This document shows, one piece after another, positions 2,958 to 61,179 of a DNA stretch of 64,000 nt. The position numbers were made by a program, and so were the translations under genes. Position 1 is the stretch's first letter. Each line of letters starts with the position of its first letter. The stretch spans positions 124,001 through 188,000 of the IMG/VR virus record IMGVR_UViG_3300026484_000087. One strand, given 5' to 3'. A model generated the notes under the pieces. It did no database searches and was not told the origin of the DNA. It saw only the letters and a program-made list of their open reading frames with translations.

Positions 2958-3728
2958 TTACCAATTATGCAGTATACAGCTATTGTCTTTTTTACAATCA
3001 AATAGATCTATAACTGATTGTAACATTTCTCTACTGTCTTCAGTAGCAACATTTTCATCCTCTTTTAAACTCTCACTTATCTCATTCTTTGTTTGGTTAT
3101 CATCTAAATCAATAGATAATAAATCAAGGGATTCAATACTCAAGGTTTTATATTTAGTAGCATGTTTTATGCCAGGTTCTATAACAAAATCCCATGTAAC
3201 CACTTGACTAAGGGTTTTAACCACTACACCATTTATAATAACATCTTTAGTTAAAGATCTTATAGAGAATGCAACATTAGCATCACTGTCCTCAAGTAGT
3301 TCTTTTAAGAACTCAGCTTTAGGACCATTAGGTTTTACTTTGCCCTTTATAAGAACTAAATTCTCATTACTACCTGGTTCTTTCTCATTAGTTTCTTCTA
3401 ACCAGATTTCTTTTATGTGTGCACATACGTTCTCTGGATTTATAGTTAAGATTCTAGTCATATAATCATTCATCGTCATAGATGGCTGCTTCTTAGGATG
3501 ACCTACTTCAGCTTTTAAAAAACCATTCTTAATTCTACGCATAAGTATAGAACTGCTTTCAAATAATTGTCTGGCACCATCTAATTTGTAGAAAGCCCCA
3601 GCGGAGTTAAAAGTATTTAACGCCCCAAGGTTAATTGTATAGTAACCATCAGCATCTACTTCTAAATCTTTATTCTTTATATTTTTAGTAGTTTTGATAC
3701 TACTAAAAACTATTTTATTATTACCCAT
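2958..3728 (-). CDS. prohead protease (phiKZ gp175-like)
   Basis: GYYTINLGALN, EVGHP (His), AFSIRSLT (Ser) and TWDFVIEPGI motifs; C-terminal SIE/ATE candidate autocleavage sites. Confidence 0.85.
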   Translation of the reverse strand: MGNNKIVFSSIKTTKNIKNKDLEVDADGYYTINLGALNTFNSAGAFYKLDGARQLFESSSILMRRIKNGFLKAEVGHPKKQPSMTMNDYMTRILTINPENVCAHIKEIWLEETNEKEPGSNENLVLIKGKVKPNGPKAEFLKELLEDSDANVAFSIRSLTKDVIINGVVVKTLSQVVTWDFVIEPGIKHATKYKTLSIESLDLLSIDLDDNQTKNEISESLKEDENVATEDSREMLQSVIDLFDCKKDNSCILHNW

Positions 3729-10292: not shown

Positions 10293-10427
10293 TATATTAA
10301 TATTTTCAATTAAATCACAGTAGTATAACCTTTATTTAAATAAAAAATAAAAAAGAGTACATTAGGTGAAATAAATACTTTTGGTTTATAAATAAAATAT
10401 AAACGGGTTCACTATGCGATTAATTCG

Positions 10428-14742: not shown

Positions 14743-15408
14743 CGTTGCCTTCACATAGGTCGTTACTCTATGCAGTTCTCTTATGAACTTCCCCAGCTTC
14801 CACTGGGAGACGAGACTATATCATGTTCTTCTGACACCATATCAGTAAGAACCAAACCACTTCGATTTAAGCACTAGGTACGTGCACCCACTTGGGCCCT
14901 ACTCCCCGCTACAGGATAGTCGTTGAACATTACCCATATTATATATATATATATAGTAACTTAGGGTCTTAGCTGCTAAAGGGAACCTTAGGTTCCACGG
15001 TTGCCTATTATACTATTATAGTGCTGATATTTATAAACGTTTAGTTGGTTACTCTAAACTGAAATATCGAGGCTATATTAATATTGATCACTTAAGATCA
15101 TCCATACAAGATACATTATTATATCCCAGTAGTTTTGCAACTACTCTTGTTAAACCGTCATAGACTAGTTTCCTGTCTATTGTGGTGGTACAGCTTTAAG
15201 GTTTTCCAGCAATTCAATTTGTTATTCGACATGCTTCTCAGCATGAAGGATCAATTTATTTTTTAACTTAAATTTAACAACATCTTTTGGCCTTTTCTAT
15301 AAAGGCGTTAGTTTTTGTTGTTTTTATTTTAAATCCTATTAGTTTATATGTATAATTAATATATGTTTACTATCTATTTCATCCTAATAGTACCAGTAAA
15401 AAAAAATT
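14743..15408 (-). mobile_element. group I self-splicing intron (IA2-like), 666 nt, no intact ORF
   Basis: Exon ends in U and intron ends in G; P AATTGCTGGAAA (~15203-15214), Q TAGCAGCTAAG, R GTTCAACGACTA (14917-14928), S TGATATAGTC (14814-14823); P1 has a U-G pair at the splice site; P8 and P9 hairpins present. Confidence 0.93.
15274..15327 (-). pseudogene. probable relic of a homing-endonuclease gene in the intron P1 loop
   Basis: AGGA RBS, then ATA in place of ATG, then KTTKTNAFIEKAKRCC*. Confidence 0.4.
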
Positions 15409-16858
15409 AATCTGCTCCTAATCTATCCAGTTTTGAAAAATGGGGACTTAAGGAATTGAAATATGCCTCCGTTAATATAGGATACTCATATACTTTATCT
15501 TCTTCCTCCCAATCAAAACCAAGGATACTAACTGTTCTGGCTTTAACTGTCGTTTTAAGATAAGGTATGCTTGGATATATACCACCTAAACCAGCAACGG
15601 GGTATCTAGTTAAGAAACCAGGATATTTTTTAACATCTTTATATATTGCTAGATATATAAGCTCAGCATATGTTATTGGTCTAAGGTATCTTTTATCTAC
15701 ATCGTCTGGTATATCTAAAGTATTCTTTATAAGTTTTACTTTTTTACCATCATCATAGATAAGGGCAAGATAATAACCCTCAACTTCTATAGGTTCAGAT
15801 CTAAGTTCATCTTGTGCTAATTTATTTATAACACTATTAAGACCTTCATCAGATGTCCACATATCCTTAGTTTTTGGTTTTATATCAACGTTAACAGTTG
15901 TTAAGGTTTTCTTATCAACTAATCTGGCAGTATTGCTATGGATATCAAATACGTCACCAAGTATCTTTAAATTTAATTGGTACTTAGTTATAGGGTTAAT
16001 AGCCTTAGAATATTGGTATAAACCTATAACGGTATTATTAAAAGATATTCTATTCTCACTGTTAGTTAAATCATGTATTACCGATGGTATTGGCGTAATT
16101 ACATTTCTAGTAGAATCTCTTATTGCCCTTTTAGTCCATTTGTTCTGTATGAACTTTTTCTTTCCATCCATCAAAGATATAAAATGATCATATATTTCAG
16201 TTATGATAGTTTGTATTCTAAATCTTATAGGATCTAATATCGTAGCATCATTAGATGATGTAGATATATTCTCAAGAGCATTTGTTGTAGTTAGTAGCTT
16301 TCTATAGATAGCGTTAACTTCATCTTCACTTGGTTTACCTGCATCATCTACTATATAATCTCTCAAACCAGCTGGAAGTACTAAAAATCTATCTATTAAA
16401 ATATCTTGACTTTTATATTTCTTAATAAGTTTAATTTTAAATTCCCTAGCATCACTATTTCTAGTTTCTAATTTAAGTTTATCATATTTAGACATAAAGA
16501 ATTCAAAACCTGTTTCACCGTCATTAGCATTTGAGAGAACAAAATCAGAACTTTTACTATCCCACTTGGCAAAAGCTTTGCCTGACATAATGTCTGAGTA
16601 TAGTTTTTTTAAGCTAGCTATATGTTTATATATTAAAGGGTGTAATACTTTTATATGTAAATTTACATAACCGAATCTTTTATTTCTTTCTTCACTTCCA
16701 ACTCTACCAAATATTTCAGTAGAGAATAATCCATCTGGATTGAAGTTTTTACTAGATGATTCGAAGATGCTAAGATCTTTAACTTCACCTATCATTTTTA
16801 TTTGGTCTCTATTAAGTATTAATAAATCTATATTAAAAGGTTCCATTTTTTCTAACAT
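15409..16858 (-). CDS. virion RNAP beta'-like subunit (phiKZ gp180-like), exon 1; spliced product 538 aa
   Basis: PDGLFSTEIFG, VLPAGLRD, TRNVIT and TRYPV motifs; ORF stops at RLGAD inside the catalytic motif. Confidence 0.93.
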
Positions 16859-16933
16859 CGCTTTTCCTTTGATAAATATTTTGAATGTTCAATTAAACTA
16901 CAAGAGTATAATAAATTATATAAAGGATAAACT

Positions 16934-27709: not shown

Positions 27710-28189
27710 TTATTCCTCCTTAACTTGGTTATTAATTATACCATCAATGATATTTTCTATATTAATAATATATGGCTGTATCTTCATCGATATCCAGTAT
27801 TTCTTTGTATCTTCAATGTTACTGTGGTAGTTATTGTATAATGTAACAAATTCTATTGCTATTGTTAGAAAGTCCAACCATTTCTTGTTACCATCTTCAT
27901 AAATTACATTATCCTTATTTGTATACCACATACTAAAACGCTTATTTTTTAATTTATTTTCTGTAATGTTATTAGCGTTAAATTCATCTATCTCTATATC
28001 ATTTATCATATTTGTTATAAGATCTATATACTCACCTATCGTGGGTTCTAAAGAATTTATTATAATGCTAGAGTTTGTTTTATATGGGTCCACTTTTACA
28101 TACTTATGTACACATATTAATTTTTTTATTAATGTTTTGCAGTTATAGCATTCTTTATTATAGAAAATCTTTTTAAATATATTTAACAT
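27710..28189 (-). CDS. hypothetical protein
   Basis: 159-aa ORF, AAGGA RBS. Confidence 0.65.
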   Translation of the reverse strand: MLNIFKKIFYNKECYNCKTLIKKLICVHKYVKVDPYKTNSSIIINSLEPTIGEYIDLITNMINDIEIDEFNANNITENKLKNKRFSMWYTNKDNVIYEDGNKKWLDFLTIAIEFVTLYNNYHSNIEDTKKYWISMKIQPYIINIENIIDGIINNQVKEE

Positions 28190-38117: not shown

Positions 38118-38221
38118 AATGTCTCCTTCCGTAATAGACCATTGATTATAGGTTCTAACTTTTGTTAGATTATTTTAAATTACCCATAATAAAAGAATCA
38201 TTAGCTATTTGATTCTTCCCC

Positions 38222-38263
38222 TATTACTACTTTTATTATATATGGTTGAAATATATTCGAAAC
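38222..38263 (-). promoter_or_regulatory. putative early promoter
   Basis: TTTCAACCATATATAATA core shared with copies at ~34211 and ~41746. Confidence 0.55.
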
Positions 38264-38322
38264 TCAATTTTAACAGTTTTTATAGACTAAGTAATTTTAT
38301 GATAAAATATAAGGAAATTAAT

Positions 38323-39762
38323 ATGTTAGATAATGAAAAACAATATGCTGCTTGTGTGTATACTGATGGTAGTGCTAATAATATGTTGAAGATATGGGGA
38401 TGGGGTTCTCACGGTTATATATATGACATTAATGAAAAGCCTAAGGTTACTAAAAATAAGCCAGTTAATATGGTAGTTACTGACATAGGATATTTAGAAC
38501 CAGGAGAGTTGAAGATCAAACCAAATGAATTAGTTAATCCAGTAGTTTATTTAGATTGGTATGGATCTTACCGTAGAGCTGGTACAAATAATGTTGGAGA
38601 ATTATTAGCTATAATAGAAACAGTAAAAAAATTACTAGAACATAATGTTACTAAGATAACTTTATTCTCAGATTCTACATATGCTATTGGTGTATTTAAA
38701 TCTAGCAAAACTAAAACAAAAGAATCTATAATTAAAAACGTAGAAGCTAATCAGGACTTATGGTTACTTGCTAAAGATATAAATGATACTGTAGAAAAAA
38801 GTAATATAGAGTTAACTATAGAAAAGATAAAAGCACATAATGGACATCTTGGTAATCATACGGCAGATGATATGGCTATGCTTGGTAGATACAATTCTAC
38901 TAAAATAATGAATGATGAAGAGATTGATTTTACATTAAGGGAACCACAAGGTTATTGGAAGCCTAAAAATGAAAGACATCCTTTCTTAACAGCTAAACAA
39001 ATATTCTTTACCAATAACGATAAGAATCCAAATGAGTATTCTTTATTAGGTTATAAGGAAGAAAACGAGATAGGTAAAAAAATGCATATAGCCAACTTTG
39101 GTTTAGTTGTTTTAAAAGATAAAGATGAGACTATAGACCTTATTAAGAATACATATAATGAGTTACTGGGAGAACACTCAGTAGTGTCTACTGTTAGAAT
39201 GGATCTTTTATTTAAACCAGATAACTTTAAATATGTAGAAAGATATGGTAAGAAATGTTTAATGCCTTTAAATAAAAATAGAAGGGGTATAAGTATACTA
39301 GAAAAAGAAATAGTGGCTAACTCTATAAATCCTCCAGCGTTAGCTTATACAGCCTTAAATAACCTAGACAACCTAAGAGTTGTATTAAATGATTTTAACG
39401 CTCTGAAGGCAGATAAAGGCTATATAACAGGCAAAGAATTTATTGACATTACAGATATGTATTATACTACTAATGATAAAGGTAAAAATGTATTTAGACA
39501 GGAATTAGGTAATGATATTAAAAGTTTAAAATATGTCTATGAAGTAGATGATAAAAAAGCAGATCTTATAATTCAATTTGGTAAAGACATACTTGCTAGA
39601 AATCCTATGAAGAAACTAGAAAAATTAGAACCTAAAGTATATTTAGTTATAGTAAATAGTAACAATGTAAAGTTGGACTATTATACCATAGTTGATATAG
39701 AAAGTACAGGCGATCAATCTGTATGGAGTAATTTTTATGCAAAGACAGTTTTTATAAAGTAA
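38323..39762 (+). CDS. rnhA: RNase HI with C-terminal extension (phiKZ gp155-like)
   Basis: YTDGS, TNNVGEL, SDS.Y and KAHNGH.GN..AD motifs; AAGGA RBS favours ATG 38323. Confidence 0.9.
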   Translation: MLDNEKQYAACVYTDGSANNMLKIWGWGSHGYIYDINEKPKVTKNKPVNMVVTDIGYLEPGELKIKPNELVNPVVYLDWYGSYRRAGTNNVGELLAIIETVKKLLEHNVTKITLFSDSTYAIGVFKSSKTKTKESIIKNVEANQDLWLLAKDINDTVEKSNIELTIEKIKAHNGHLGNHTADDMAMLGRYNSTKIMNDEEIDFTLREPQGYWKPKNERHPFLTAKQIFFTNNDKNPNEYSLLGYKEENEIGKKMHIANFGLVVLKDKDETIDLIKNTYNELLGEHSVVSTVRMDLLFKPDNFKYVERYGKKCLMPLNKNRRGISILEKEIVANSINPPALAYTALNNLDNLRVVLNDFNALKADKGYITGKEFIDITDMYYTTNDKGKNVFRQELGNDIKSLKYVYEVDDKKADLIIQFGKDILARNPMKKLEKLEPKVYLVIVNSNNVKLDYYTIVDIESTGDQSVWSNFYAKTVFIK

Positions 39763-43491: not shown

Positions 43492-43515
43492 AACGACTCC
43501 TTTATATTTATATCT

Positions 43516-43560
43516 GATACTGCCATGTATCTATATTAATAATATATAAGTAAAAAAAAT
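43516..43560 (-). promoter_or_regulatory. putative early promoter plus 5' hairpin
   Basis: TTATATATTATTAATATA-GATAC-ATGGCA-GTATC. Confidence 0.6.
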
Positions 43561-43564
43561 TAGA

Positions 43565-43596
43565 TAACTACTTAGGACATATGTCCTAAGTAGTTA
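43565..43596. terminator. perfect 32-bp palindrome
   Basis: TAACTACTTAGGACAT|ATGTCCTAAGTAGTTA. Confidence 0.6.
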
Positions 43597-45075
43597 CATC
43601 TTAACGATTTTTATAAGGTTATTAACCATGCCTATTTGATGGTTTATTAAACTATAATTAGTCATTGCTATAGATATCAAACTAGCATTATTATCTAGAC
43701 CAGTAGATAATGCATGTAATGTAGATTTAGTTATTTCAAACTTATTATCTTTACTAACAATATGTTCATGTAGCATATTAGTTTTTTCAGCTATCTCTTT
43801 AACTAAGCTATCTATTTTACTAAAATTAACCTTACCAAGTTTATTTCCTAGAATGGCAGTATCTTCAGCAAGCTTAGGCAATGAAGTTAAATTTGGTACA
43901 AGTTTACCAACTGGCATTCTATCGTTGTTAGAGTTAACATCTATAACCCCAGATAGATTATTTTTTATCTCATAAGCAACTTCTTCGGTTTTTTCAAAAA
44001 GTGTTTTCTTAGGTTTAAAAGATTTTCTGTAATCTTCATCAGACATTATCTTACTTAAGATGACATTTAACTCACTAAGAGAATCTATAATTAAAGAACC
44101 TAACATATGTTCATTTTTACTAAGTTTATTTTCAAGTTCTATTAGGTTAGTGTTTAAACCAATAACGACTGGGGTTTCTCTAGATTCTATACTAGCATAA
44201 CTTTTATTCTTAATAATTCTCTTAAGAGAACTAATATCACTTCTAAGTTGTCTAAGTTCTTTATTGCTTTCACCAGATATACCACTTATGGTTTCTGTAA
44301 CACCAGAGAATAATTCGCTAATAGAATTTAATCTATTTAAAACAAAGTTATTTATATTACTAATTAAACCATTTTCATTACTAAGCATATTAACCGCTTC
44401 ATCTACTGATTCAAAACTAAGAGTTTCTTCTAACGTTACTAACTGATTAACTTTTTCCATATTCTTTTTCCTTTTATCCCATACATCTTGTATGTTCTGT
44501 GATTGACTACCCCATTTAAGATTGGTAGCATTACAATTCTCTTTATTATCGTCCTTATGCATAACGACAAAACCTTTTGGACCAACTCCATGAAATGCAG
44601 TACAAACCAATATATGTACATACTCCATTTTACTTTTGGTGCTACCATCTTTAAAAATAGATACTTTAAGATAGTGTCCAGCACTAACACCTTTAGTAAA
44701 ATTACCTGTTTTCAATGTAAGTATTTCTCCAAGGTTACTCGCCAGATACTTACTAAATCCAGGTATAGGTTTCCATATTCTATCCATAGCATTTAATGGG
44801 ACAGGTATCCTATTTGATACATCTACATTAACTGGCAACTCAATTGGTATTATGTTTTTATGTATATAAGGAGCTTCCTCATCTACATATAGGCCATCAT
44901 CTGATAGACTAAATACTTTATAGTACCATCCATCAAGTTTTCTATGTTTTTTCTTAATAGCTTTAACAAGGTCTTTTAATGTCTTATACATTTTTATATA
45001 ACCAGTGCTATTTACCTTAATTTCTATTTTTTTATTAAGTATATCTGTTTTATAAATTGGTAAATATAATACCAC
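43594..45075 (-). CDS. NUMOD4/HNH endonuclease fused to a putative virion head protein; internal start at 44460
   Basis: WKPIPGFSKYLASNLG (NUMOD4) and VHILV..AF, VMHKDDNKENCNATNLKW (HNH); helical C-terminal part with SFE/SNE sites and its own AAGGA RBS. Confidence 0.8.
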   Translation of the reverse strand: MVLYLPIYKTDILNKKIEIKVNSTGYIKMYKTLKDLVKAIKKKHRKLDGWYYKVFSLSDDGLYVDEEAPYIHKNIIPIELPVNVDVSNRIPVPLNAMDRIWKPIPGFSKYLASNLGEILTLKTGNFTKGVSAGHYLKVSIFKDGSTKSKMEYVHILVCTAFHGVGPKGFVVMHKDDNKENCNATNLKWGSQSQNIQDVWDKRKKNMEKVNQLVTLEETLSFESVDEAVNMLSNENGLISNINNFVLNRLNSISELFSGVTETISGISGESNKELRQLRSDISSLKRIIKNKSYASIESRETPVVIGLNTNLIELENKLSKNEHMLGSLIIDSLSELNVILSKIMSDEDYRKSFKPKKTLFEKTEEVAYEIKNNLSGVIDVNSNNDRMPVGKLVPNLTSLPKLAEDTAILGNKLGKVNFSKIDSLVKEIAEKTNMLHEHIVSKDNKFEITKSTLHALSTGLDNNASLISIAMTNYSLINHQIGMVNNLIKIVKM

Positions 45076-45139
45076 TAATTACTCCTTATAATACATTATT
45101 TCATATAAATGTTAGGTGGTAAAAGAAAAATACCATTAG

Positions 45140-45165
45140 GTTAGATGTGCCATGGCACATCTAAC
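45140..45165. terminator. perfect 26-bp palindrome
   Basis: GTTAGATGTGCCA|TGGCACATCTAAC. Confidence 0.55.
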
Positions 45166-45246
45166 ATTATTTCTTAAGTTAATAAATATTGCATGACAAT
45201 AGTGTATTGCTATCATTATCAATTTGATATTTAAGCTTATACTTTA

Positions 45247-45900
45247 TTAGACACCCACATTTTCATCTTCCTTCCTAATCATATGCAAGGTTAAGTTTTT
45301 ATTATCTACTTTAAAATACTTAAAAGGATTACTTTCTTCAGTTACATAGCCAGTAACTACATGTGGTCGATACCCCTTTCTAACAAAGATACCAACATTC
45401 TCCATAGAGGCTAAGTACTCTTGACCATCATACTGATCTAAATTATTTAATTTAGTTATGATATTAATTACATTAGCATTACTTAAACCTTCATTCATGT
45501 CTATCATAACAACATTTTCTTTTGGTATCTTATTGCATTTGTTACCACAGATATCGTCAATTTCATCATCTATAACTATATATGTTTCCACATTGTGTCC
45601 AAATTCAAACAGGTAATCCAATATCTGTTCGCCTCTAAGATTCTTCTTCCTAGGAGTTGAACCAATTATGCGATCTAGATATTTAAATCTCTGTTTCTCT
45701 AATTTTCTTTTAAGTTGATTTTCAAACCATGATGACGAAATAACTATTTTTAAATCAGGCACTCTTTCAAGTATAAATTCTAATCTTACCATAAGATGAT
45801 GTTCAATTGGATCATTTCCAATATTATTAAAGCCATGACTGTAGTAACTTGGACCCATGATATTAAGTACACCATCTACATCTAAGAATAATATTTTCAT
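45247..45900 (-). CDS. HAD-superfamily phosphatase (HAD_SAK type)
   Basis: ILFLDVDGVLN, IVISSSW, RGEQI and YIVIDD motifs. Confidence 0.8.
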   Translation of the reverse strand: MKILFLDVDGVLNIMGPSYYSHGFNNIGNDPIEHHLMVRLEFILERVPDLKIVISSSWFENQLKRKLEKQRFKYLDRIIGSTPRKKNLRGEQILDYLFEFGHNVETYIVIDDEIDDICGNKCNKIPKENVVMIDMNEGLSNANVINIITKLNNLDQYDGQEYLASMENVGIFVRKGYRPHVVTGYVTEESNPFKYFKVDNKNLTLHMIRKEDENVGV

Positions 45901-51332: not shown

Positions 51333-51384
51333 GATACTGCCTAGTATCTATTTTAATAATATATAACTATAATAATGTTGAAAA
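51333..51384 (-). promoter_or_regulatory. putative early promoter plus 5' hairpin
   Basis: TTATATATTATTAAAATA-GATAC-TAGGCA-GTATC. Confidence 0.6.
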
Positions 51385-51458: not shown

Positions 51459-52901
51459 ATGGCTATTAAATTTAATGTACCAAAGCCTAGACAGGCTAGA
51501 ATATTAATAAACATCGGTGCCTCATTTGACATCCCTACAGGTTTCCCTGTAACTGGTGCAAAAGGTGAAACAATATGGAATGGTGGTATTGGTTTAACTA
51601 CAGGTATCATTGGTAGAAGCAATAACTTTAAATCTTCTATTATGCATTATATGATGTTATCTGCAGCAGATAAGATAGCATATACTCATGAAACATCTAT
51701 GCATCTTTATGATACAGAGGTTACAGCTATACCTGAAAGATTGGATGCTTTAGGTAATCAATTCGAACATCTTGGTAAGGATGTAGCTACTAGGGAAGAT
51801 CCATCTTTAGTCATAACTGATAAATCGCAATACGCTGCTGATGAATGGGGTAGTCTTTTAAAAGCGTTTCTATCTGAAAAAGAAAATGATAAGAATTCTA
51901 TTATTGATTATACTGCATTCAGAGATCCAAATACTAAAGGTATGCTTAGAACACAGGTTCCCACATTTGTAGAGATAGATTCATTATCTGAATTTGAAGC
52001 AGGTACTACTATAGAGATGCTTAATAAGAGTAAGTTAGATGATGGTTCTACAAATACTTTATTCATGAGACAAGGTTTATACAAATCTAAATTCTTAGCA
52101 GAACTACCTAGACTTACCACAAACAGTAATACATTCTTTTTTATGTCGGCTCATCTTGGCGAGGAGATAGCTATGGGTTCTAGTCCTTATTCTCCTGGAC
52201 CAACTAAGAAATTACAATTTTTAAAAGTCGGCGATAAGATTAAGGGCGTATCTGATAAGTTTTTATTCTTAATGTCTAATGCATGGTATGCTAGTGGAGT
52301 ATCTGTACTCAAAAATCAAACAACTAGACAAGCTGAATATCCACTAGATAATAAAGCTGATTCTGCAGAAACTGAGTTGCAGGTAGTTAGATTAACGCAA
52401 CTAAGAAGTAAGTCTGGTATATCTGGATATACATTAGATATAGTTGTTTCTCAAAATGAAGGCGTTCTACCGACACTTACAGAGTTCCACCAAATAAAAA
52501 CAAATGGTAAATTTGGTATATCTGGAAGTAACCTAAGTTATAACTTAGATCTTTTACCAGATGTTAAACTTAGTAGAACTACGGTTAGAACTAAAATAAA
52601 TACAGATCCTAAACTTAGAAGAGCTATAAATATCACTAGTGAGCTAGCACAAATGTATAAGTTCCATCCGAAGTTAAATGAAGATGGCTTATTATGTAGT
52701 CCAATGGAATTATATGAAGATATAACTAAAATGGGTTATGATTGGGATTTATTATTAAATACAAGAGGTTGGTGGACTCCTAATAACTATGAAACTGAAA
52801 TACCGTTTCTAAGTACTATGGATTTACTTAAAATGAGAAAAGGTTTATATAAACCATTCTGGTATCCAAAAGATAAATTAAAAGATATAAAGGAATTATA
52901 A
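51459..52901 (+). CDS. uvsX: RecA/UvsX-like recombinase (phiKZ gp152-like)
   Basis: N.GA.FDIPTG, GRSNNFKS Walker A, YDTE, EIDSLS Walker B, LRSKSG. Confidence 0.85.
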   Translation: MAIKFNVPKPRQARILINIGASFDIPTGFPVTGAKGETIWNGGIGLTTGIIGRSNNFKSSIMHYMMLSAADKIAYTHETSMHLYDTEVTAIPERLDALGNQFEHLGKDVATREDPSLVITDKSQYAADEWGSLLKAFLSEKENDKNSIIDYTAFRDPNTKGMLRTQVPTFVEIDSLSEFEAGTTIEMLNKSKLDDGSTNTLFMRQGLYKSKFLAELPRLTTNSNTFFFMSAHLGEEIAMGSSPYSPGPTKKLQFLKVGDKIKGVSDKFLFLMSNAWYASGVSVLKNQTTRQAEYPLDNKADSAETELQVVRLTQLRSKSGISGYTLDIVVSQNEGVLPTLTEFHQIKTNGKFGISGSNLSYNLDLLPDVKLSRTTVRTKINTDPKLRRAINITSELAQMYKFHPKLNEDGLLCSPMELYEDITKMGYDWDLLLNTRGWWTPNNYETEIPFLSTMDLLKMRKGLYKPFWYPKDKLKDIKEL

Positions 52902-54921: not shown

Positions 54922-57900
54922 TTATTTTATCTCAGTAGTATCTTTAGTAACCACATTAGGTTTATCTACAGTTTCATCTTCATAAACTATAGTTTTTAGT
55001 TCATTTATATTAACTAAACCATTTATATCTATTTCATTATTTATAGAAATAGTATCTTTTGTTTTATCTAAACTACCTTTAAGTTTAGGACTATACATAT
55101 CTACAGGAGTTCTATTATCGCCTATCACATTAGGTTTACTAGATTTATCTCTATCCATATCATACATAATTGTTCTTGTTGTACTAACATTTATTTCACC
55201 TATTACTACATCCGTATTTATATTAGATGTTTTATTTGTTTCAATATCTTTTGTTCTACTTAACTTAGGTTTAAACATTCCTACATCTACTTTACCATCA
55301 GTAGCTATTAAAGCTGGTGTACTATCTACCCCATCCTCATTACTATATATAATAGTATTTAACTCGCTACTTATAGCAAGACCAGTAAGATCATTAACAT
55401 TTATAACTTCAGTATCCTCTAATTCTAAAGTTTCTGTTTTTGGCATAACTGGAACAAACATGTTGTCTAATTCATTATCTATAGAACCAACAAGTTCAGG
55501 TACTATAGTTTTAGCCAAATTGTTTTCCTCTACCCTACCAATACCAGTAACATCCTTTTTGGTTTTACTACCTTTAATTGTATTGTCAACAACATATTCA
55601 GTATCTTTGAAAACAATCTCTACTGATTTATTTATTTTAGGTTTAAACATATCTACATTAGAACTCATATCACCTATTAATTCAGCATCATTGTTTGTAT
55701 TTAAATCTTTACTATATAATAGGGCTTTAACAAACTTGCGATTATATGTACCAGTGAATGTATCTGTAGTTAAAGTATATGTTTCATTTAACTTATATCC
55801 TTTAGCTGTACTAGTTGGACTAAACATATCATCTAGATCACTATTTACAGAACCATATAGTACGGGGTTAAGGTCTCCCGCTATAACTGGTGACATATTA
55901 AGAAGTATACCATTGGTAGTTTTAACTCTTTTACTACCAACAATAGTCTCAGTAATTATGCCATCTATATCATCGGCTCTATTGCTAATAACGTCTGTTA
56001 CTAAAGGTTTGAATAGGTTAAGTGCAACATCATTGTTTCCTATTAAAGATCCAACTTCATATTCACTTATCTCACCATTTTCACCATACATTATTATTTT
56101 ATTTATATCTTGTAGAACGTTACCTTTATAATTTATACCTTTAGGTATAGAATCAAGGATATCCTTTTCATCTACAGAACCTGTTTTAAAATCAGGTTTA
56201 AATAATGTTAATGTTGATAAATTAGTATTAAATTTACCTATAGGAGCAACATCTACCCATATATCTTTACTATTTATATCCATAGTAATTTTATTGGCAT
56301 CACTTCTACTTGTACCAGAGACAGTACTCGTATTAATTGTAGTATCCAAACCATCAACTTGTTCATTGGAGTTAACTCTAAACTTAGGATGATACATCTC
56401 TATTATGTTCTTAGTAGTATTGAAGTAAACATTAGGTTCTATATCACCATCTATAACATTACTTGTATTATAGAACATCATTTCATTCTTACCAGTAACA
56501 CTACCCATAGGAACATAGTTTTCACTGTAAGGATTTCTTACAACTTCATCTATACCGTAAGTTATACCGTCAACTTTTGGAGAGAACATATCTATGGTTT
56601 TATAGTTTCTACTACCTCTAAGTACTGGCTTGCTTCCATCATTAGGTCTATTATCTATATCTTCTAATAATACTTCCATATGATTATTGATATATCTACC
56701 TTTACTAGTATCAAAGCTGCCAGCCACTATTCTATATGATTCATTTATACTAAATACTTCAGATCTAGGCTTATAAAGTTTAGTATCAGCTTTTCTAACA
56801 GAACCGTATACGTTTGGTTTATTAGAGCTTTCTATATCCATTGTTTCATTAAACATAGTAAGTACATTATGATCATTATTTAAAGAACCATTGTATCCAT
56901 AATTATTTTTCATTGGAACAAGATCTTCTGCTAATGGGTTATAGATATTTGAAACATTTGGTTTAAAGTAATCCAAAACTCTCATACCAGTATCTATGAT
57001 AGCAGTTGGTTTATTATTTTCTAAAATATCATCTGTATACATTCTAAGTTTGGTTGTATTTATTTGTACTCTACCAAAACCTTTGGTAAAGTTACTTACG
57101 AATGCTAATGTAGTATCCTCTACACTAGTATTTAAAGCTACAATAGGATTAAACATATTTATAATACTATTATTAGTAGATACCTTAAATGTAGAAATTT
57201 CACTAGACCACAATTCTTTACTAATAACAGACATACTCACCATATTTCTATGGTTATTAGTTTTACCCATAACAACCGTTTTGGATGCTGAATAATTTAT
57301 ACTAGATACTTCATCATTAGTTATGCCGCTAACTATAGGACTAAACCAATTAAGTACGTCTTTATTAACGTGTCCTAGAACATTAGGTATGGTACTAAAA
57401 TCCTCATATAGTTTAACATCCGTAACGCCTTTACCAAGATTACCATACATACTTACTCTATATTCTATTTCAGAATTAAGTACTTCCCTTTCTTTCTTAT
57501 CCATGCTAATATTAGGAGAATACATATTCACTGTACCAAATTCACTAACAAAAGATAATACTGGAAGGGTGCTGTTTTCAAGATCATGATGTAATTGCAT
57601 ATCCATTTTAACAGGAGTATTTAAAACAGTACCTGATAATTTATTTACGGTATTTATACCATCTATAAACGTTCTATCAAAACCACCATTGGATAACAGG
57701 ATAGGACTATACATTGTTATAGAGGCTTTTTTGCTCCTACTTATCATAGTTGTCTGTTCTACAATAATATCAGTTTTATCAACATGCATTGTAATAATAT
57801 TATCATCAGTTCTAGATGAACCATGAATAAACTCATTTTCTGTTTTATCTATAACATCTACAATATCATTTATGTTTCCACTAACTATAGGAGAGAACCA

Positions 57901-60900
57901 TTTAAGTAGTCTCTTACTTGTATTCATCACTAATGTAGGCATAGCATTATCGGTATTTAATCCAGTTTCCCCACTAACTATAAGTTTGGTTTCACCTCTT
58001 TTTATGTTAACGTTACTATTAAACTTATTACTTATGAATTTTAAATCAAGAGTAATATTTAAAGTATCTGTTGTAAATGTTGGTTTAAAGAAATCAATGC
58101 CTTTTAAAGGAACATTGGCTATAAGAGTACTTGTCTCTTGATACATTTCAGAATCATAGTTCTCGATTCTTGTTTTTAAAGTATGGTCTTTAGCTATACC
58201 TTTAATATATGTATCTTTAAAATACTCAGTACTTTCTTTATTGTTTTTATCTATAAACGATCCTATTTTAGGAGAGTACATATTTAAACTAGACTCTATG
58301 TTTCTTATAAGATTAATAGAAGTCTCTCCAGTTATAGAATGTATTCCATCAGACATAAGTAATTTAACCTTAGCCTTTTGTTTACCATAAGGAATCATGC
58401 TAGCGTTAAATACGTTGTCTATTGTTTTATAATAATCTTCATCATTTTTACCACTATCTAAGCTAGGTCTAAACATATCTGGTATACCACCAATACTATA
58501 AGTAATATTAGGCATACTATAATTGAAAATACCTAAAGGCGTTTCCATAGTTATGTTTATACTATCTTGTTTAATGTAACCTGTTTGACCTCTATCTATA
58601 GTTAAAGAATCACTTTTGTTCATGGTCTTATCTGACATAGATTTAACTGTAGGTTTATACCAATCTAATAGTCTTCTGTTTGTACTCATAACCATTTCTG
58701 GTTTGCCATTTACTTCAACATTACTTGATATATCATAAAGCTTAAATTTGGTAACATCATTTATAAAATTACCATAACTTAAGTTAAATGAATTAGAACC
58801 TATGGTCTGAATTATATTATCAGACTTACTGTTAACTATCGGACTAAATAGTCTAAAAGACAATGGTCCAGCAGTTGTGGTAATCGTAGGTGTATTAGAA
58901 TAATCCAATTCTTTACTATACCACTCCATAGCAGTTTGGATGTATCTTTTAACAACTCTACCAACTTTACTAGTCTCACTACTAGCTAATTGGATAATAT
59001 CTTTCATATCATTTATTTTAGTACCTATATAAGGTCTAAACATAGTTAGATATGATTTATTGCTAAATACAACATCAGGCATTTCATTTTTAACATGTAG
59101 TACATTGGTTAACGCTAAACGTTCTTCAGGTTCGTATAACATTAATTTAGGAGGATTTATTCTGGTATAACCTCTTGGTATCATCAATTCTATATCAGAC
59201 TTTAAGAAGCATCCATAAGGAGCATCTCTGGCGGCCATATAACCATAAAAGTCTTCAAGTGCTCTAAATGTACCTTCATGAATATCAATGATACCAGGAG
59301 TACTTATTGACATATTTGTATTATATCTAGTAGACATAACATCTAAACTATTTGTACTATTCATAAACTGTATTGTGCTAGAAGATAAGTTTTTAACTAT
59401 CTTAATATATTTGTCAACCATTTCATTAACATCATCTTTATCAAAATAGAATCCAGTAAATGCATAAAGAACCTTATTTAATGTTTCTTTATAATCATAT
59501 ACGTCTGTAAAATAGAAATCCACAAATTGGTTAGCCATTAGTTCGTCTATAGTACTATCTCCTTGATTGAAGATAATAGTCTCTTTCATATGTAAACGTT
59601 TATACATTGTTTTTATAGAATTGTTTATGAGCATATCGTTAGAGTTTGTTGCTATATTCCAAATTACTGAATTAAAACTATTCAAGTCTTTTAAATATTG
59701 ATTAAATATATCTCTATCTAAGTATGTTAGTCTATCTGGTCTTAATTCTATAAGTTTTTTAGCTATGTCATATGTTATAGTAGGGTTTATCATGTTATAA
59801 TTAAGGGCATCCACTGTTATAACGCTATTTAAAAGTTTATTTGCAGTATAAGATGGAATCTTTGGATTAACATTGCCACTAATAACTGCTAGTAACTTAA
59901 GAATTAAGAAAGCTGCTTGCTTAGCATCTAAGTCATAAGTAAATCCAGTATTATTATCTATAAATGTTATTGATGTTTTATAAATATCTCTAAATGCCAT
60001 TTGTATAAAGTTATCTAGAACCATTTTTAGTTCTATCTTATTCTCAACTACATAAGATCTATTCACTTTTATCTTAAATGTTTTAGTTTTTTGTTTATTG
60101 AATTTATTTTTATCCAATTTATATTCTAAGGTATTGTCGTAAAAATTCGTATCTTTTATAACCATATCGTTATCTACAAATGCTTTACTAAATTGTCTAA
60201 GCAATAAAGCCTTACCACTTGTATCATCATTATCATCTATTAGATAATAATCATTTCTTCTTTTAGATATGAACCTATTCTCTTTTTTATCATATATTGG
60301 CTTAGTTATATCTGTTAAATTCAATAAGTCTTCATCTGGTAAACCGTTTAGAAGTTCTACCTCAGCTACGCCTATACCATTTTCAGTAAGTATCTTTTCT
60401 ATAAGTATATCAAGAGTTTTGTTTTTACCTATATTATTCTTGATATATCTAAGATTCTTATATAACCAAAACCTAGTTTCTTTACTAAGAACCTTAACAT
60501 CTACATCTATACCATAATTAGATCTAAAAAATTCATAGATATGAAAACTGTGTGCTTCAGATGTAAAGATATAATCCTGTCTTATATTCAATGTTTTTAA
60601 AACCATTTTAGTATAGAGTGTTGCTAATAGTGACGGTATATAAAGATCATCAATTATGCCATAATCTCTAATATGCCAACGTAGAAAATAGTTCTTAGAG
60701 AACTCATTAAGTCTATGTATTAAATTGGTTTCCTGCTCTTCAACTAGATAAGGACTATGTGCAACTAATTCTCCATTAGTGCAGTTAATGACATCGTTTA
60801 TATCAAGTCCATATATAATACCCTTTATAAGCAATTCATCTTCAGGATACTCTGCTACTAAATCATTATAGTATGTATCAAATTTCTTTAATTCATTTCT

Positions 60901-61179
60901 AGTAGTCTTATATTTATCAAGGAGTTCTTTAGTTAGTTTTTGAACAGAACCATCTTCAATGATAGTTATATTTATTCGATGGTCTAATTTATGATATTCT
61001 CCAGATATGTTCATAAAGTATTTCCAGGTAGTACGATCCTCTGGTTCATCTCCTAGAATACTTGTGCCGTATATTTTAACAAGTTCATTGTTAATTTGTA
61101 TTGCTGTATCTATACTGAGAATGATTAAACTTTTAATCAATCTTACAGTATCTTCAATATATTTTGTAGTTGTAATCAT
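54922..61179 (-). CDS. virion structural protein (phiKZ gp128-like) with long repetitive C-terminus
   Basis: TWKYFMNISGEYH, AHSFHI and WLYKNLRYI..NIGK motifs; divergent from the portal gene. Confidence 0.75.
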   Translation of the reverse strand: MITTTKYIEDTVRLIKSLIILSIDTAIQINNELVKIYGTSILGDEPEDRTTWKYFMNISGEYHKLDHRINITIIEDGSVQKLTKELLDKYKTTRNELKKFDTYYNDLVAEYPEDELLIKGIIYGLDINDVINCTNGELVAHSPYLVEEQETNLIHRLNEFSKNYFLRWHIRDYGIIDDLYIPSLLATLYTKMVLKTLNIRQDYIFTSEAHSFHIYEFFRSNYGIDVDVKVLSKETRFWLYKNLRYIKNNIGKNKTLDILIEKILTENGIGVAEVELLNGLPDEDLLNLTDITKPIYDKKENRFISKRRNDYYLIDDNDDTSGKALLLRQFSKAFVDNDMVIKDTNFYDNTLEYKLDKNKFNKQKTKTFKIKVNRSYVVENKIELKMVLDNFIQMAFRDIYKTSITFIDNNTGFTYDLDAKQAAFLILKLLAVISGNVNPKIPSYTANKLLNSVITVDALNYNMINPTITYDIAKKLIELRPDRLTYLDRDIFNQYLKDLNSFNSVIWNIATNSNDMLINNSIKTMYKRLHMKETIIFNQGDSTIDELMANQFVDFYFTDVYDYKETLNKVLYAFTGFYFDKDDVNEMVDKYIKIVKNLSSSTIQFMNSTNSLDVMSTRYNTNMSISTPGIIDIHEGTFRALEDFYGYMAARDAPYGCFLKSDIELMIPRGYTRINPPKLMLYEPEERLALTNVLHVKNEMPDVVFSNKSYLTMFRPYIGTKINDMKDIIQLASSETSKVGRVVKRYIQTAMEWYSKELDYSNTPTITTTAGPLSFRLFSPIVNSKSDNIIQTIGSNSFNLSYGNFINDVTKFKLYDISSNVEVNGKPEMVMSTNRRLLDWYKPTVKSMSDKTMNKSDSLTIDRGQTGYIKQDSINITMETPLGIFNYSMPNITYSIGGIPDMFRPSLDSGKNDEDYYKTIDNVFNASMIPYGKQKAKVKLLMSDGIHSITGETSINLIRNIESSLNMYSPKIGSFIDKNNKESTEYFKDTYIKGIAKDHTLKTRIENYDSEMYQETSTLIANVPLKGIDFFKPTFTTDTLNITLDLKFISNKFNSNVNIKRGETKLIVSGETGLNTDNAMPTLVMNTSKRLLKWFSPIVSGNINDIVDVIDKTENEFIHGSSRTDDNIITMHVDKTDIIVEQTTMISRSKKASITMYSPILLSNGGFDRTFIDGINTVNKLSGTVLNTPVKMDMQLHHDLENSTLPVLSFVSEFGTVNMYSPNISMDKKEREVLNSEIEYRVSMYGNLGKGVTDVKLYEDFSTIPNVLGHVNKDVLNWFSPIVSGITNDEVSSINYSASKTVVMGKTNNHRNMVSMSVISKELWSSEISTFKVSTNNSIINMFNPIVALNTSVEDTTLAFVSNFTKGFGRVQINTTKLRMYTDDILENNKPTAIIDTGMRVLDYFKPNVSNIYNPLAEDLVPMKNNYGYNGSLNNDHNVLTMFNETMDIESSNKPNVYGSVRKADTKLYKPRSEVFSINESYRIVAGSFDTSKGRYINNHMEVLLEDIDNRPNDGSKPVLRGSRNYKTIDMFSPKVDGITYGIDEVVRNPYSENYVPMGSVTGKNEMMFYNTSNVIDGDIEPNVYFNTTKNIIEMYHPKFRVNSNEQVDGLDTTINTSTVSGTSRSDANKITMDINSKDIWVDVAPIGKFNTNLSTLTLFKPDFKTGSVDEKDILDSIPKGINYKGNVLQDINKIIMYGENGEISEYEVGSLIGNNDVALNLFKPLVTDVISNRADDIDGIITETIVGSKRVKTTNGILLNMSPVIAGDLNPVLYGSVNSDLDDMFSPTSTAKGYKLNETYTLTTDTFTGTYNRKFVKALLYSKDLNTNNDAELIGDMSSNVDMFKPKINKSVEIVFKDTEYVVDNTIKGSKTKKDVTGIGRVEENNLAKTIVPELVGSIDNELDNMFVPVMPKTETLELEDTEVINVNDLTGLAISSELNTIIYSNEDGVDSTPALIATDGKVDVGMFKPKLSRTKDIETNKTSNINTDVVIGEINVSTTRTIMYDMDRDKSSKPNVIGDNRTPVDMYSPKLKGSLDKTKDTISINNEIDINGLVNINELKTIVYEDETVDKPNVVTKDTTEIK
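54925..59200 (-). repeat. about 22 degenerate ~62-aa protein repeats
   Basis: Periodic [M/W/L/F/Y][F/Y]xP motif, e.g. MFRP, WYKP, WFSP, MYSP, LFKP. Confidence 0.75.

What the first reader, a model, noticed from the sequence alone, without database searches (positions are those of the whole stretch)
43594..45075. HNH endonuclease fused to the N-terminus of a putative head protein: a possible capsid-hitchhiking nuclease
Seen: a NUMOD4-HNH ORF (GTG 45075, AAGGAG RBS) runs without a stop into a 288-aa helical protein that keeps its own RBS and ATG (AAAAGGAAAAAGAAT-ATG at 44460). That protein starts MEKVNQLVTLEETLSFE...LSNE. Established: phiKZ head proteins have propeptides cut after S/A/G-x-E, and jumbo-phage HNH nucleases can damage competing phages. 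Inference: two in-frame products are made. The long one could carry the nuclease into the prohead, where the protease encoded at 2958-3728 would release it for delivery with the genome.
Basis: partly seen in the sequence, partly recalled or inferred. Interest (0 to 1): 0.8.

Follow-up and report, generated by a model that had tools for sequence, protein, structure and literature searches.

The report
HNH nuclease fused to phage head protein
In a hydrothermal-vent jumbo phage, a homing-type HNH nuclease gene has lost its stop codon and reads straight into the gene for a capsid-vertex protein that related phages inject, just upstream of that protein's maturation cut site, so the nuclease could ride into the capsid, although this is unproven and some relatives keep the two genes separate.

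Summary
A 493-aa ORF (43594-45075, minus strand) joins an I-HmuI-like NUMOD4/HNH_3 endonuclease (residues 1-205) in frame to a 288-aa helical protein that keeps its own Shine-Dalgarno (SD) sequence and ATG.

It is not an assembly error. Four independent assemblies carry it, as two variants 90% identical, both uninterrupted. Three further lineages with C-parts only 26-39% identical carry the same fusion.

The C-terminal part is the ortholog of phiKZ gp153, Goslar gp192 and 201phi2-1 gp238. It falls in the same PHROG and has the same RNaseH/UvsX synteny. Goslar gp192 is solved as an inner-capsid vertex-binding protein. phiKZ gp153 is cut by the prohead protease at SQE-52 and is injected. The window's LSNE (residues 231-234) aligns with that cut site and is the family's most conserved N-terminal feature.

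Every lineage keeps ATG plus an AGGA motif at the junction although the linker residues differ, so two products are likely.

Capsid hitchhiking by the nuclease is plausible but unproven. Two close relatives carry the same HNH gene directly upstream but unfused. Other relatives fuse a helicase or unknown domains at the same N-terminus.

Verdict: a new variant of known kinds, of moderate to high interest.

The parts
43594..45075 (-). Full 493-aa ORF: the HNH endonuclease fused in frame to the gp153-family head protein.
   Evidence: The same ORF is present in four assemblies.
45082..45087 (-). Shine-Dalgarno AAGGAG, 6 nt before the GTG start.
   Evidence: It is conserved in the 90% variant L003.
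45094..45115 (-). Conserved promoter-like motif CTAACATTTATATGAAATAATG upstream of the ORF (TATG-containing). It occurs once in the window.
   Evidence: It is identical in variant L003. Similar TTAATATGATA motifs lie upstream of the fused genes in L011 and L013. Promoter function is inferred only.
45140..45165 (.). Palindromic hairpin with a T-run, terminator-like, that separates the unit from the upstream HAD-like gene.
   Evidence: In the variant it is replaced by a different hairpin.
44461..45075 (-). HNH module, residues 1-205: an N-terminal domain of about 95 aa, NUMOD4 (44644-44778) and HNH_3 (44494-44622).
   Evidence: Pfam; phrog_59 at 3.8e-34; I-HmuI 1U3E at E 1.2e-12. H173, N185 and N194 are intact. 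dN/dS is 0.044.
44469..44473 (-). Internal Shine-Dalgarno AAGGA, 8 nt before the internal ATG.
   Evidence: An AGGA motif is kept 5-9 nt upstream of the ATG in all 7 lineages examined, fused or not.
43594..44460 (-). The 288-aa gp153/gp192-family head protein (vertex-binding, ejected), with its own ATG at 44458-44460.
   Evidence: phrog_4682 at E 4.6e-16; hhalign to Goslar gp192 at 96% and phiKZ gp153 at 97%; AF2 pLDDT 93.9; BFVD TM 0.65-0.79.
44374..44385 (-). LSNE (fusion residues 231-234, C-part residues 26-29): the predicted prohead-protease cleavage site.
   Evidence: It aligns with phiKZ gp153 ISQE-52 and Goslar LSME-26. Glu is present in 76 of 80 family members and [LIVM][SAG]xE in 63 of 80.
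44410..44418 (-). SFE (residues 220-222): a second S-x-E motif, not conserved in the family.
   Evidence: It is lineage-specific and only a possible extra site.
43564..43597 (-). 15-bp hairpin with a T-run directly after the stop codon: an intrinsic-terminator-like end of the unit.
   Evidence: It is conserved in L003.
2958..3728 (-). Head maturation protease, ortholog of phiKZ gp175.
   Evidence: phrog_3014 at E 2.9e-71.
38209..39762 (+). RNase H-like ribonuclease: a synteny marker (phiKZ gp155, Goslar gp190).
   Evidence: phrog_3265.
51459..52901 (+). UvsX-like recombinase: a synteny marker (phiKZ gp152, Goslar gp193).
   Evidence: phrog_97. It is 48-56% identical to the divergent neighbour of the fused genes in L011, L013, L015 and L103.

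Best explanation
**What it is.** A free-standing, I-HmuI-like NUMOD4/HNH_3 endonuclease gene sits immediately 5' of this phage's gp153/gp192-family head-protein gene. The phage is a distant phiKZ-like phage (Chimalliviridae, the nucleus-forming jumbo phages). The endonuclease gene has no stop codon of its own. The pair forms one transcription unit bounded by hairpin terminators.

**Two products (inferred).**
- Ribosomes starting at GTG 45075 make a 493-aa HNH-head-protein fusion.
- Ribosomes starting at the retained SD and ATG (44460) make the ordinary 288-aa head protein. This form must supply most of the roughly 55 copies per capsid seen for the Goslar ortholog.

**Cleavage (inferred).** The conserved prohead-protease site LSNE lies 29 residues after the junction. 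Any fusion molecule that co-assembles into the prohead through its head-protein part would be cut by the protease encoded at 2958-3728. The cut would give a 234-aa HNH fragment trapped in the head and a normal mature head protein.

**Shown here:** the identity of the two parts, the conservation of the fusion, the purifying selection on both halves, and the conserved start signals and cleavage motif.

**Inferred:** dual initiation, co-assembly and cleavage.

**Open:** whether carrying the nuclease into the capsid is an adaptation or a tolerated side effect of read-through.
For: **ORF and domains:**

**The fusion is real.**
- It is reproduced in independent assemblies and in a 90% variant.
- It is also present in P0006, P0008 and P0029, with a homologous HNH and a conserved Met at the junction.

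**Selection and co-inheritance.**
- dN/dS is 0.044 for the HNH part and 0.111 for the head part, at dS about 0.6.
- HNH and head-part divergences co-vary: 39-64% against 18-42% identity. This points to long vertical co-inheritance, not a decaying selfish gene.

**Head-protein identity.**
- phrog_4682 is shared with Goslar gp192 and phiKZ gp153.
- hhalign gives 96-97% probability and an HMM built from alignment A3 finds both.
- The RNaseH-X-UvsX synteny is conserved.
- The Goslar gp192 structure has 55 chains per virion in the vertex-binding complex (bioRxiv 10.64898/2026.04.21.720040).
- phiKZ gp153 is cleaved at SQE-52 (PMC5694885) and is injected (PMC10449902).

**Cleavage motif:** aligned and conserved.

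**Internal start:** ATG plus AGGA is retained in all lineages despite different linker residues. In the unfused relatives the same signal must be the start.

**Nuclease core:** H, N and N are intact.

**Transcription unit:** bounded by terminator-like hairpins.
Against: - There are no protein-level data. No virion proteome exists for this uncultured phage.
- The internal SD (AAGGA, 8-nt spacer) is weaker than the AAGGAG at the GTG, so the ratio of the two products is unknown.
- A 205-aa globular domain in front of the propeptide might prevent incorporation. How gp153-family proteins are targeted to the prohead is not known.
- Three contigs (L009, L010, L020) have the same HNH gene unfused. The fusion is therefore not needed for either gene to work.
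- P0029 lacks the Glu at the aligned LSxE position, although it has GLE eight residues earlier.
- Only assembled contigs, not raw reads, could be laid on the junction.
Confidence: 0.7

Rival explanations
1. Adaptive capsid hitchhiking. The fusion exists in order to load an active, site-specific HNH nuclease into proheads. The protease frees it, and it travels with the genome into the next cell, or sits in the capsid. There it cuts competing phage genomes or genomes that lack the HNH gene. The phage's own genome is safe because it lacks the target site.
For: - The fused state is kept in four lineages that are deeply diverged. P0006, P0008 and P0029 share an I-T/S-M linker, which suggests an old fusion.
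- Purifying selection on the HNH part is strong.
- The cleavage site lies exactly between cargo and carrier.
- The carrier family is injected in phiKZ (PMC10449902).
- Other enzymes are fused at the same N-terminus: an SNF2 helicase in P0101, in two assemblies, and three unknown domains.
- phiKZ virions already carry a helicase and an RNase H-like protein, according to the record's notes.
- Jumbo-phage HNH enzymes can act in phage-phage competition (PMC11620839).
- In T4, an engineered capsid-targeting sequence can encapsidate a nuclease (PMC3012670).
Against: - Unfused relatives lie inside the same clade.
- No target site is known and no close relative lacking the HNH gene was found.
- An injected nuclease would arrive inside the phage's own early infection vesicle, not beside a competitor's DNA (inference from chimallivirus biology, bioRxiv 10.64898/2026.04.21.720040).
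- There are no proteomic data.
Confidence: 0.3
2. Neutral, tolerated read-through. The HNH gene is an ordinary free-standing homing-type endonuclease that acts from the cytoplasm or the phage nucleus. Its stop codon is lost and regained by indels in the A/G-rich junction. This costs nothing because the head protein has its own start, and anything N-terminal of LSxE is either clipped off or never assembled.
For: - Fused and unfused states are interspersed on the tree.
- The junction is an A-rich tract in which one extra A would fuse the two frames in L009.
- Several unrelated upstream domains are fused to the same N-terminus, as expected if N-terminal extensions are harmless.
- The free-standing HNH of 207 aa in L020 shows that the enzyme is complete without the head part.
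Against: - Four of six or seven lineages are fused, and the frame is kept over dS about 0.6 and much deeper.
- If the state were neutral, in-frame stops in the short linker should be common.
- The partners are biased towards DNA enzymes (HNH, helicase).
Confidence: 0.4
3. The HNH module is only a giant propeptide. There is no internal initiation, and all head protein is made as the 493-aa precursor and trimmed by the protease.
For: - There is a single ORF with a strong SD at the GTG.
- Propeptide lengths vary in the family, from 26 to 74 residues.
Against: - The junction Met and the AGGA motif are conserved in all fused lineages although the linker residues differ.
- The unfused relatives use exactly this start.
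- About 55 nuclease copies per head would be costly.
Confidence: 0.08
4. A sequencing or assembly error hides a stop codon or a frameshift between two separate genes.
For: - The junction is A-rich, and the Logan data are contigs, not raw reads.
Against: - There are four independent assemblies and two sequence variants with about 175 substitutions but no frame change.
- Three further lineages carry the same fusion.
Confidence: 0.02

Closest known systems
phiKZ gp153 / 201phi2-1 gp238 / SPN3US gp214 / Goslar gp192 (phrog_4682): the head vertex-binding and ejected protein of Chimalliviridae
   Same: - Same PHROG and profile, same all-helical fold of about 280-300 aa, and the same position between the RNase H-like and UvsX-like genes.
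- The conserved (L/I/V)-S-x-E site aligns with the mapped phiKZ cleavage site SQE-52.
-.
   Different: - It carries a 205-aa HNH endonuclease in frame at its N-terminus. The isolates phiKZ and Goslar have no HNH gene at this locus.
- The sequence is very divergent: at most 15% identity to the isolates, and tblastn finds nothing.
I-HmuI (Bacillus phage SPO1, PDB 1U3E) and other NUMOD4/HNH_3 phage homing endonucleases
   Same: - The NUMOD4 sheet and the HNH core align with I-HmuI residues 3-100 (E 1.2e-12).
- The catalytic His and two Asn residues are conserved.
   Different: - It is not intron-encoded (no Rfam intron).
- It lacks I-HmuI's C-terminal helices and helix-turn-helix and has an extra N-terminal domain of about 95 aa.
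- It has Met in place of Asp74, a position that varies across the family.
- It has been co-inherited with its neighbour gene over deep divergence and is fused to it.
T4 internal proteins with a capsid targeting sequence, and engineered fusions of that sequence to nuclease or GFP
   Same: - The logic is the same: an N-terminal segment removed by the prohead protease, and a cargo enclosed with the DNA and delivered on infection (PMC3012670).
   Different: - In T4 the short N-terminal peptide is the address and the C-terminal part is the cargo.
- Here the putative cargo is N-terminal and the structural protein would be the address.
- There is no sequence relationship, and this case is natural, not engineered.
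PhiPA3 gp210, the intron-encoded HNH endonuclease of a nucleus-forming jumbo phage
   Same: - An HNH nuclease in a chimallivirus, with a demonstrated role in competition between co-infecting phages (PMC11620839).
   Different: - gp210 lies in a group I intron of an RNA polymerase gene and acts after import into the phage nucleus.
- It has no link to a virion protein.
Intron ORFs translated in frame with a flanking exon and released by proteolysis (mitochondrial LAGLIDADG enzymes); inteins
   Same: - A mobile-element nuclease made as a fusion with a host protein and separated from it post-translationally (from general knowledge, not tested here).
   Different: - There is no intron and no Hint or intein domain.
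- Separation would be done by a viral maturation protease at the host protein's own site.

Membership tests
phiKZ gp153 / Goslar gp192 head-protein family (phrog_4682) | Significant sequence or profile similarity over the whole length. | tested here: met
   - phrog_4682: window 4.6e-16, Goslar gp192 3.2e-24, phiKZ gp153 2.9e-92.
- hhalign probability 96.4% and 97.0%.
- The HMM built from alignment A3 hits both.
phiKZ gp153 / Goslar gp192 head-protein family (phrog_4682) | Conserved genome position between the RNase H-like and UvsX-like genes. | tested here: met
   - Window: 38209-39762, 43594-44460 and 51459-52901.
- Goslar: gp190, gp192 and gp193.
- phiKZ: gp155, gp153 and gp152.
-.
phiKZ gp153 / Goslar gp192 head-protein family (phrog_4682) | All-alpha fold of about 280-300 aa. 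| tested here: met
   - AF2 with an 80-sequence alignment: pLDDT 93.9, pTM 0.91.
- BFVD TM 0.65-0.79 to proteins of 271-301 aa from PhiEaH1, RP31, RSL2, Noxifer, Psa21 and EL.
phiKZ gp153 / Goslar gp192 head-protein family (phrog_4682) | N-terminal propeptide ending in an S/A/G-x-E prohead-protease site. | tested here: met
   - LSNE aligns with phiKZ ISQE-52 (cleavage reported in PMC5694885).
- Glu is present in 76 of 80 family members.
- Actual cleavage was not tested.
phiKZ gp153 / Goslar gp192 head-protein family (phrog_4682) | Physically present in the virion head, and injected. | not testable with these tools
   This is known only for phiKZ, 201phi2-1, SPN3US and Goslar (PMC5694885, PMC10449902, bioRxiv 10.64898/2026.04.21.720040, PDB 11fg and 36za).
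NUMOD4/HNH_3 (I-HmuI-like) homing endonucleases | NUMOD4 and HNH_3 domains above the Pfam gathering scores. | tested here: met
   NUMOD4 scores 27.4-29.9 bits (cut-off 23.4) and HNH_3 scores 47.7-49.4 bits (cut-off 24.8). I-HmuI matches at E 1.2e-12.
NUMOD4/HNH_3 (I-HmuI-like) homing endonucleases | Catalytic His and metal-binding or structural Asn residues. | tested here: met
   - H173, N185 and N194 correspond to I-HmuI H75, N87 and N96.
- They are invariant in 83-84 of 85 related viral HNH genes.
- The Asp74 equivalent is Met here, but that position is variable (Asp in 4 of 85).
NUMOD4/HNH_3 (I-HmuI-like) homing endonucleases | A C-terminal DNA-binding module (helices plus helix-turn-helix) as in I-HmuI. 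| tested here: not met
   The alignment stops at I-HmuI residue 100 of 174. The free-standing homolog in L020 ends at 207 aa. An N-terminal domain of about 95 aa, shared with phrog_59, may replace this module.
NUMOD4/HNH_3 (I-HmuI-like) homing endonucleases | Mobility: a patchy distribution with close relatives that lack the nuclease gene. | tested here: inconclusive
   - The HNH gene is absent upstream of the gene in P0009, P0010, phiKZ and Goslar.
- Within the clade, HNH and head protein co-diverge.
- No close relative lacking the HNH gene was found.
NUMOD4/HNH_3 (I-HmuI-like) homing endonucleases | Site-specific DNA cleavage. | not testable with these tools
   This needs an enzyme assay.
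Inteins | Hint splicing domain flanking the nuclease. | tested here: not met
   Pfam finds no Hint or intein domain in the 493-aa protein.
phiKZ_IP inner-body proteins (PF12699) | A match to PF12699. | tested here: not met
   There was no hit for the window protein at E<=1 and none among the 80 family members at E<=0.01. The only indication is an ESM-Atlas feature-similarity lead.

The most novel reading that the evidence does not exclude
The N-terminus of the gp153/gp192 family may be a natural, modular loading dock for capsid cargo in nucleus-forming jumbo phages. DNA-acting enzymes (here an HNH nuclease, elsewhere an SNF2 helicase and at least three unknown domains) would be made as N-terminal fusions and drawn into the prohead by the vertex-binding protein. 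The prohead protease would release them at the conserved LSxE site, and they would then be co-packaged or injected. On this reading the HNH is a pre-loaded, self-safe weapon against competing genomes.
Probability: 0.25. Interest if true: 0.8.

Novelty: new variant of a known kind. Interest (0 to 1): 0.6.

Why it matters
How phiKZ-like phages sort more than 50 proteins into their heads, and which of those proteins are delivered to the next cell, is largely unknown.

This locus is a natural construct in which a nuclease sits in front of the maturation site of a protein that is known to line the capsid vertices and to be injected. That gives a concrete, testable handle on capsid targeting and cargo release. 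Is an N-terminal passenger carried in, cut off and ejected?

If the answer is yes, three things follow:
- It shows a new way for homing-type nucleases to persist and act, as virion cargo.
- It extends the idea that mobile nucleases serve in competition between phages.
- It suggests a loading strategy for engineered jumbo-phage payloads.

If the answer is no, the locus is a clean example of a maturation protease making N-terminal gene fusions harmless.

Tried and rejected
**Searches that found nothing**
- Megablast and tblastn of the locus and of the C-part against 50,697 phage records found nothing, even at E<=10. The same was true for family members P0012 and P0021.
- The word-index protein search found only the protein itself, both with the single sequence and with the profile.
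- Scans of metagenome and viral contigs with the clade's head-part profile returned only the window's contig and L020.
- No paralog of either half exists in the window. No tRNA or Rfam family, and so no intron, was found.

**Structure**
- Single-sequence AF2 was useless (pLDDT 40.6).
- Foldseek against the PDB library gave only a weak top hit, phiKZ capsid chain 8y6v_G (E 0.028, TM 0.32). The Goslar entries were evidently not in that library.

**Ideas tested and dropped**
- Membership of the PF12699 inner-body family, suggested by the ESM Atlas, was not confirmed.
- The nuclease might have been dead because Met replaces I-HmuI Asp74. This was rejected because that position is variable in 85 related HNH genes.
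- The N-terminal domain of P0077 is not a decayed HNH.
- Sigma-70 promoter matches are not enriched.
- TTTAATTGAW upstream of virion genes is no more frequent than chance.

**Limitation**
- Raw reads were not available; only Logan contigs could be laid.
Full report
**1. The observation**

The minus strand carries a single ORF from GTG 45075 to the stop at 43594, 493 aa. AAGGAG lies 6 nt upstream of the GTG. Only one sense codon precedes the GTG in the stop-to-stop frame.

Pfam places NUMOD4 at residues 100-144 and HNH_3 at 152-194, both above their gathering scores. The frame then runs into ATG 44460, which is preceded by AAAAGGAAAAAGAAT.

The window is a distant phiKZ-like jumbo phage of the family Chimalliviridae, with 29% G+C. 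It encodes:
- a head maturation protease at 2958-3728 (phrog_3014, E 2.9e-71);
- a virion structural protein at 3738-4469;
- an RNA polymerase beta subunit at 15407-16858, at most 40% identical to any isolate.

The contig is IMGVR_UViG_3300026484_000087, 206,244 bp, from a hydrothermal vent metagenome.

**2. The fusion is not an artefact**

- The protein's 90% cluster has four members of 493 aa from JGI, ENA and Logan assemblies, on contigs of 206 kb and 213 kb and on short ones.
- They fall into two variants that are 90% identical in protein. The variants differ by about 175 nucleotide substitutions and have no net frame change.
- Between the variants dS is about 0.6. dN/dS is 0.044 for the HNH part and 0.111 for the C-terminal part, so both halves are under purifying selection.
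- Only Logan contigs could be laid, not raw reads. The source run's contig matches the window with 0 differences across 43567-45400.

**3. What the C-terminal part is**

It matches phrog_4682 (E 4.6e-16). An exhaustive phmmer search found 151 relatives, most of them free-standing proteins of 280-300 aa.

A profile of 80 of these relatives (alignment A3) hit two PDB sequences. Both are Goslar gp192, confirmed with the Goslar gene itself:
- 11fg_Z covers residues 1-280.
- 36za_5 covers residues 33-280 in 55 chains, and is labelled 'Tail Tube gp217' in the table.

[quoted passage not shown] Fifty-five chains equal 5 per vertex at 11 non-portal vertices.

Further evidence for orthology:
- Goslar gp192 and phiKZ gp153 both belong to phrog_4682 (E 3.2e-24 and 2.9e-92).
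- Both match the family profile by hhalign, at 96.4% and 97.0% probability.
- Synteny is conserved. An RNase H-like gene (phrog_3265) and a UvsX-like gene (phrog_97) flank the gene in the window, in Goslar (gp190, gp193) and in phiKZ (gp155, gp152).
- With the alignment, AlphaFold gives a confident all-helical model (pLDDT 93.9, pTM 0.91).
- That model matches proteins of about 280 aa from PhiEaH1, RP31, RSL2, Noxifer, Psa21 and EL at TM 0.65-0.79. Some of these are annotated as virion structural proteins.

From the literature:
- phiKZ gp153 and 201phi2-1 gp238 are head proteins cut by the prohead protease at SQE-52 and STE-64.
- The SPN3US homolog gp214 is an essential head protein that is not processed (PMC5694885).
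- phiKZ gp153 was validated as injected into the host, and the cleavage consensus was refined to LSxE (PMC10449902).

**4. The cleavage site**

hhalign aligns the window's LSNE (C-part residues 26-29, fusion residues 231-234, coordinates 44374-44385) with phiKZ ISQE-52 and with Goslar LSME-26.

In the 80-sequence alignment, Glu is present at this column in 76 sequences and [LIVM][SAG]xE in 63. This is the most conserved feature of the N-terminal region. It usually lies 26-32 residues from the N-terminus.

In the AlphaFold model LSNE lies in an extended segment before the first long helix.

**5. The HNH part**

- It aligns with the homing endonuclease I-HmuI (1U3E) over I-HmuI residues 3-100 (E 1.2e-12).
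- H173, N185 and N194 correspond to I-HmuI H75, N87 and N96.
- The Asp74 equivalent is Met. Among 85 related viral HNH genes that position is variable (Asp in only 4), while the His and the two Asn are nearly invariant. The catalytic core therefore looks intact.
- I-HmuI's C-terminal DNA-binding half is absent. An N-terminal domain of about 95 aa, shared with phrog_59, is present instead.
- There is no intron, intein or paralog in the window.

**6. Relatives**

*Fused lineages.* P0006 (485 aa), P0008 (494 aa) and P0029 (494 aa) carry the same HNH fused to the same family. They sit in their own 50%-identity clusters. Each has a Met exactly at the junction. Each lies beside a divergently transcribed UvsX-like gene.

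*Unfused lineages.* The nearest 'free-standing' relatives also have the homologous HNH gene directly upstream, but unfused:
- In L009 (P0005) the HNH stop overlaps the start of the head gene, in another frame.
- In L010 (P0007) the HNH gene has its own stop codon and a 38-nt spacer.
- In L020, a 110-kb contig from the same sample, a 207-aa HNH (75% identical) ends 1 nt before a 483-aa ORF. In that ORF an unknown 195-aa domain is fused in frame to the head protein at the same point.

*No HNH.* More distant members (P0009, P0010, phiKZ, Goslar) have no HNH gene at this locus.

*Divergence and tree.* HNH identities (39-64%) track head-part identities (18-42%), which indicates long vertical co-inheritance. 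In a maximum-likelihood tree P0001, P0005, P0006, P0007 and P0008 form one clade (support 94/96) in which fused and unfused states are interspersed. P0029 falls in an unresolved polytomy. Either reading requires at least two changes of state.

*Junction.* The junction is an A/G-rich tract in which single-base indels switch the frame.

**7. Two products**

In all seven lineages examined, fused or not, the head gene's ATG is preceded by (A/G)AGGA at 5-9 nt. The amino acids encoded there differ between lineages: KRKKN, SEGIT, KGKIT and ARIS.

That pattern points to selection on the nucleotide signal. In the unfused relatives the same signal must be the start. I therefore infer that both the 493-aa fusion and the 288-aa protein are made.

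The unit is bracketed by terminator-like hairpins at 45140-45165 and 43564-43597. It has a conserved TATG-containing motif upstream. Promoter function for that motif is only inferred.

**8. Other passengers**

Of the 151 relatives, eight proteins (counting the window's own) have N-terminal extensions of 100 aa or more, and only one (P0079) has a C-terminal extension.

The passengers are:
- the HNH, in four of the eight;
- an SNF2/ResIII helicase (P0101), found in two assemblies at the canonical UvsX-divergent locus and keeping MENL and ISNE at the junction;
- unknown domains (P0077, P0098, P0099).

L020's unknown 195-aa domain (section 6) is a further case from a fetched locus. The N-terminus of this family, ahead of the protease site, is therefore a recurrent acceptor of extra domains.

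**9. Mechanism and rivals**

*Best supported (confidence 0.7).* This is a resident HNH endonuclease gene that has lost its stop codon. It gives a fusion product and, through the retained start, the normal head protein. Any fusion molecule that assembles into the prohead would be cut at LSNE into a 234-aa nuclease fragment and the mature protein.

Whether that is an adaptation or a tolerated side effect cannot be decided here.
- *Tolerated read-through (about 0.4).* For it: unfused relatives inside the clade, a slippery junction, unrelated passengers, and a complete free-standing HNH in L020.

Two further rivals are unlikely:
- *Pure giant propeptide without internal initiation (0.08).*
- *Assembly error (0.02).*

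**10. Comparison and novelty**

The two halves belong to known families: the gp153/gp192 head-protein family and the I-HmuI-like HNH_3 endonucleases. The second membership carries a caveat, because I-HmuI's C-terminal DNA-binding module is absent.

The logic resembles T4 capsid-targeting-sequence cargo, for which an engineered nuclease has been encapsidated (PMC3012670). It also connects to the competitive role of PhiPA3 gp210 (PMC11620839).

I found no description, in the papers searched, of a natural nuclease placed in front of the maturation site of an injected jumbo-phage head protein. I rate it a new variant of a known kind, with interest 0.6.

Noticed in passing
window 14516-14537, 27753-27774, 43527-43548, 51344-51365 (minus strand): The 22-nt motif TATATATTATTAATATAGATAC occurs 4 times against 0.12 expected. 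Three copies lie about 35 nt upstream of minus-strand gene starts (14481, 43491, 51300) and are followed by GG(C/T)AGTATC, so the motif looks like a phage promoter. The stretch 43513-43583 has 20-40 times the local word depth and many contig ends in the Logan assemblies, which suggests a multi-copy element.
   Followed up: partly
L020:2710-4786 (IMGVR_UViG_3300026484_000105, same sample): A related phage has a free-standing 207-aa HNH (75% identical). One nucleotide after its stop begins a 483-aa ORF in which an unknown 195-aa domain (no Pfam or PHROG hit) is inserted in frame at the 5' end of the head-protein gene. ATGGAA is repeated at both ends of the insert.
   Followed up: partly
L103:4001-6955 and L104:2510-5464 (P0101): In another chimallivirus lineage, an SNF2/ResIII helicase of about 690 aa is fused N-terminally to the gp153-family protein at the canonical locus beside the UvsX-like gene. 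MENL and ISNE are retained at the junction. It is seen in two independent assemblies.
   Followed up: partly
PDB 36za chain 5 versus L006:22758-23597: The chain listed as 'Tail Tube gp217' (248 aa, 55 chains) is in fact Goslar gp192 residues 33-280. This is either a label mismatch in the table or in the deposit. The model starts 7 residues after LSME-26.
   Followed up: yes
window 45140-45165 versus L003:1330-1418: The terminator-like hairpin upstream of the HNH unit is replaced in the 90% variant by an unrelated hairpin of similar size, while the promoter-like motif and the SD just downstream stay identical.
   Followed up: no
window 2907-2916, 10305-10314, 16888-16897 (minus strand): TTTAATTGAW lies 20-30 nt upstream of the starts of three virion or RNA polymerase genes. 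However, the count (3) is not above chance (2.6 expected), so it is only a weak lead for a late promoter.
   Followed up: partly
window 16934-25864 (+), 54922-61179 (-), 6105-10292 (-): There are three very long ORFs (2976, 2085 and 1395 aa) that were not characterised here. The window has no tRNA and no Rfam match.
   Followed up: no
L009:90-150: In the unfused relative the HNH frame and the head-gene frame differ by one base within A-runs (A7 and A6). One extra A in the second run would recreate an in-frame fusion without stop codons, so the fused or unfused state may switch by homopolymer slippage.
   Followed up: partly
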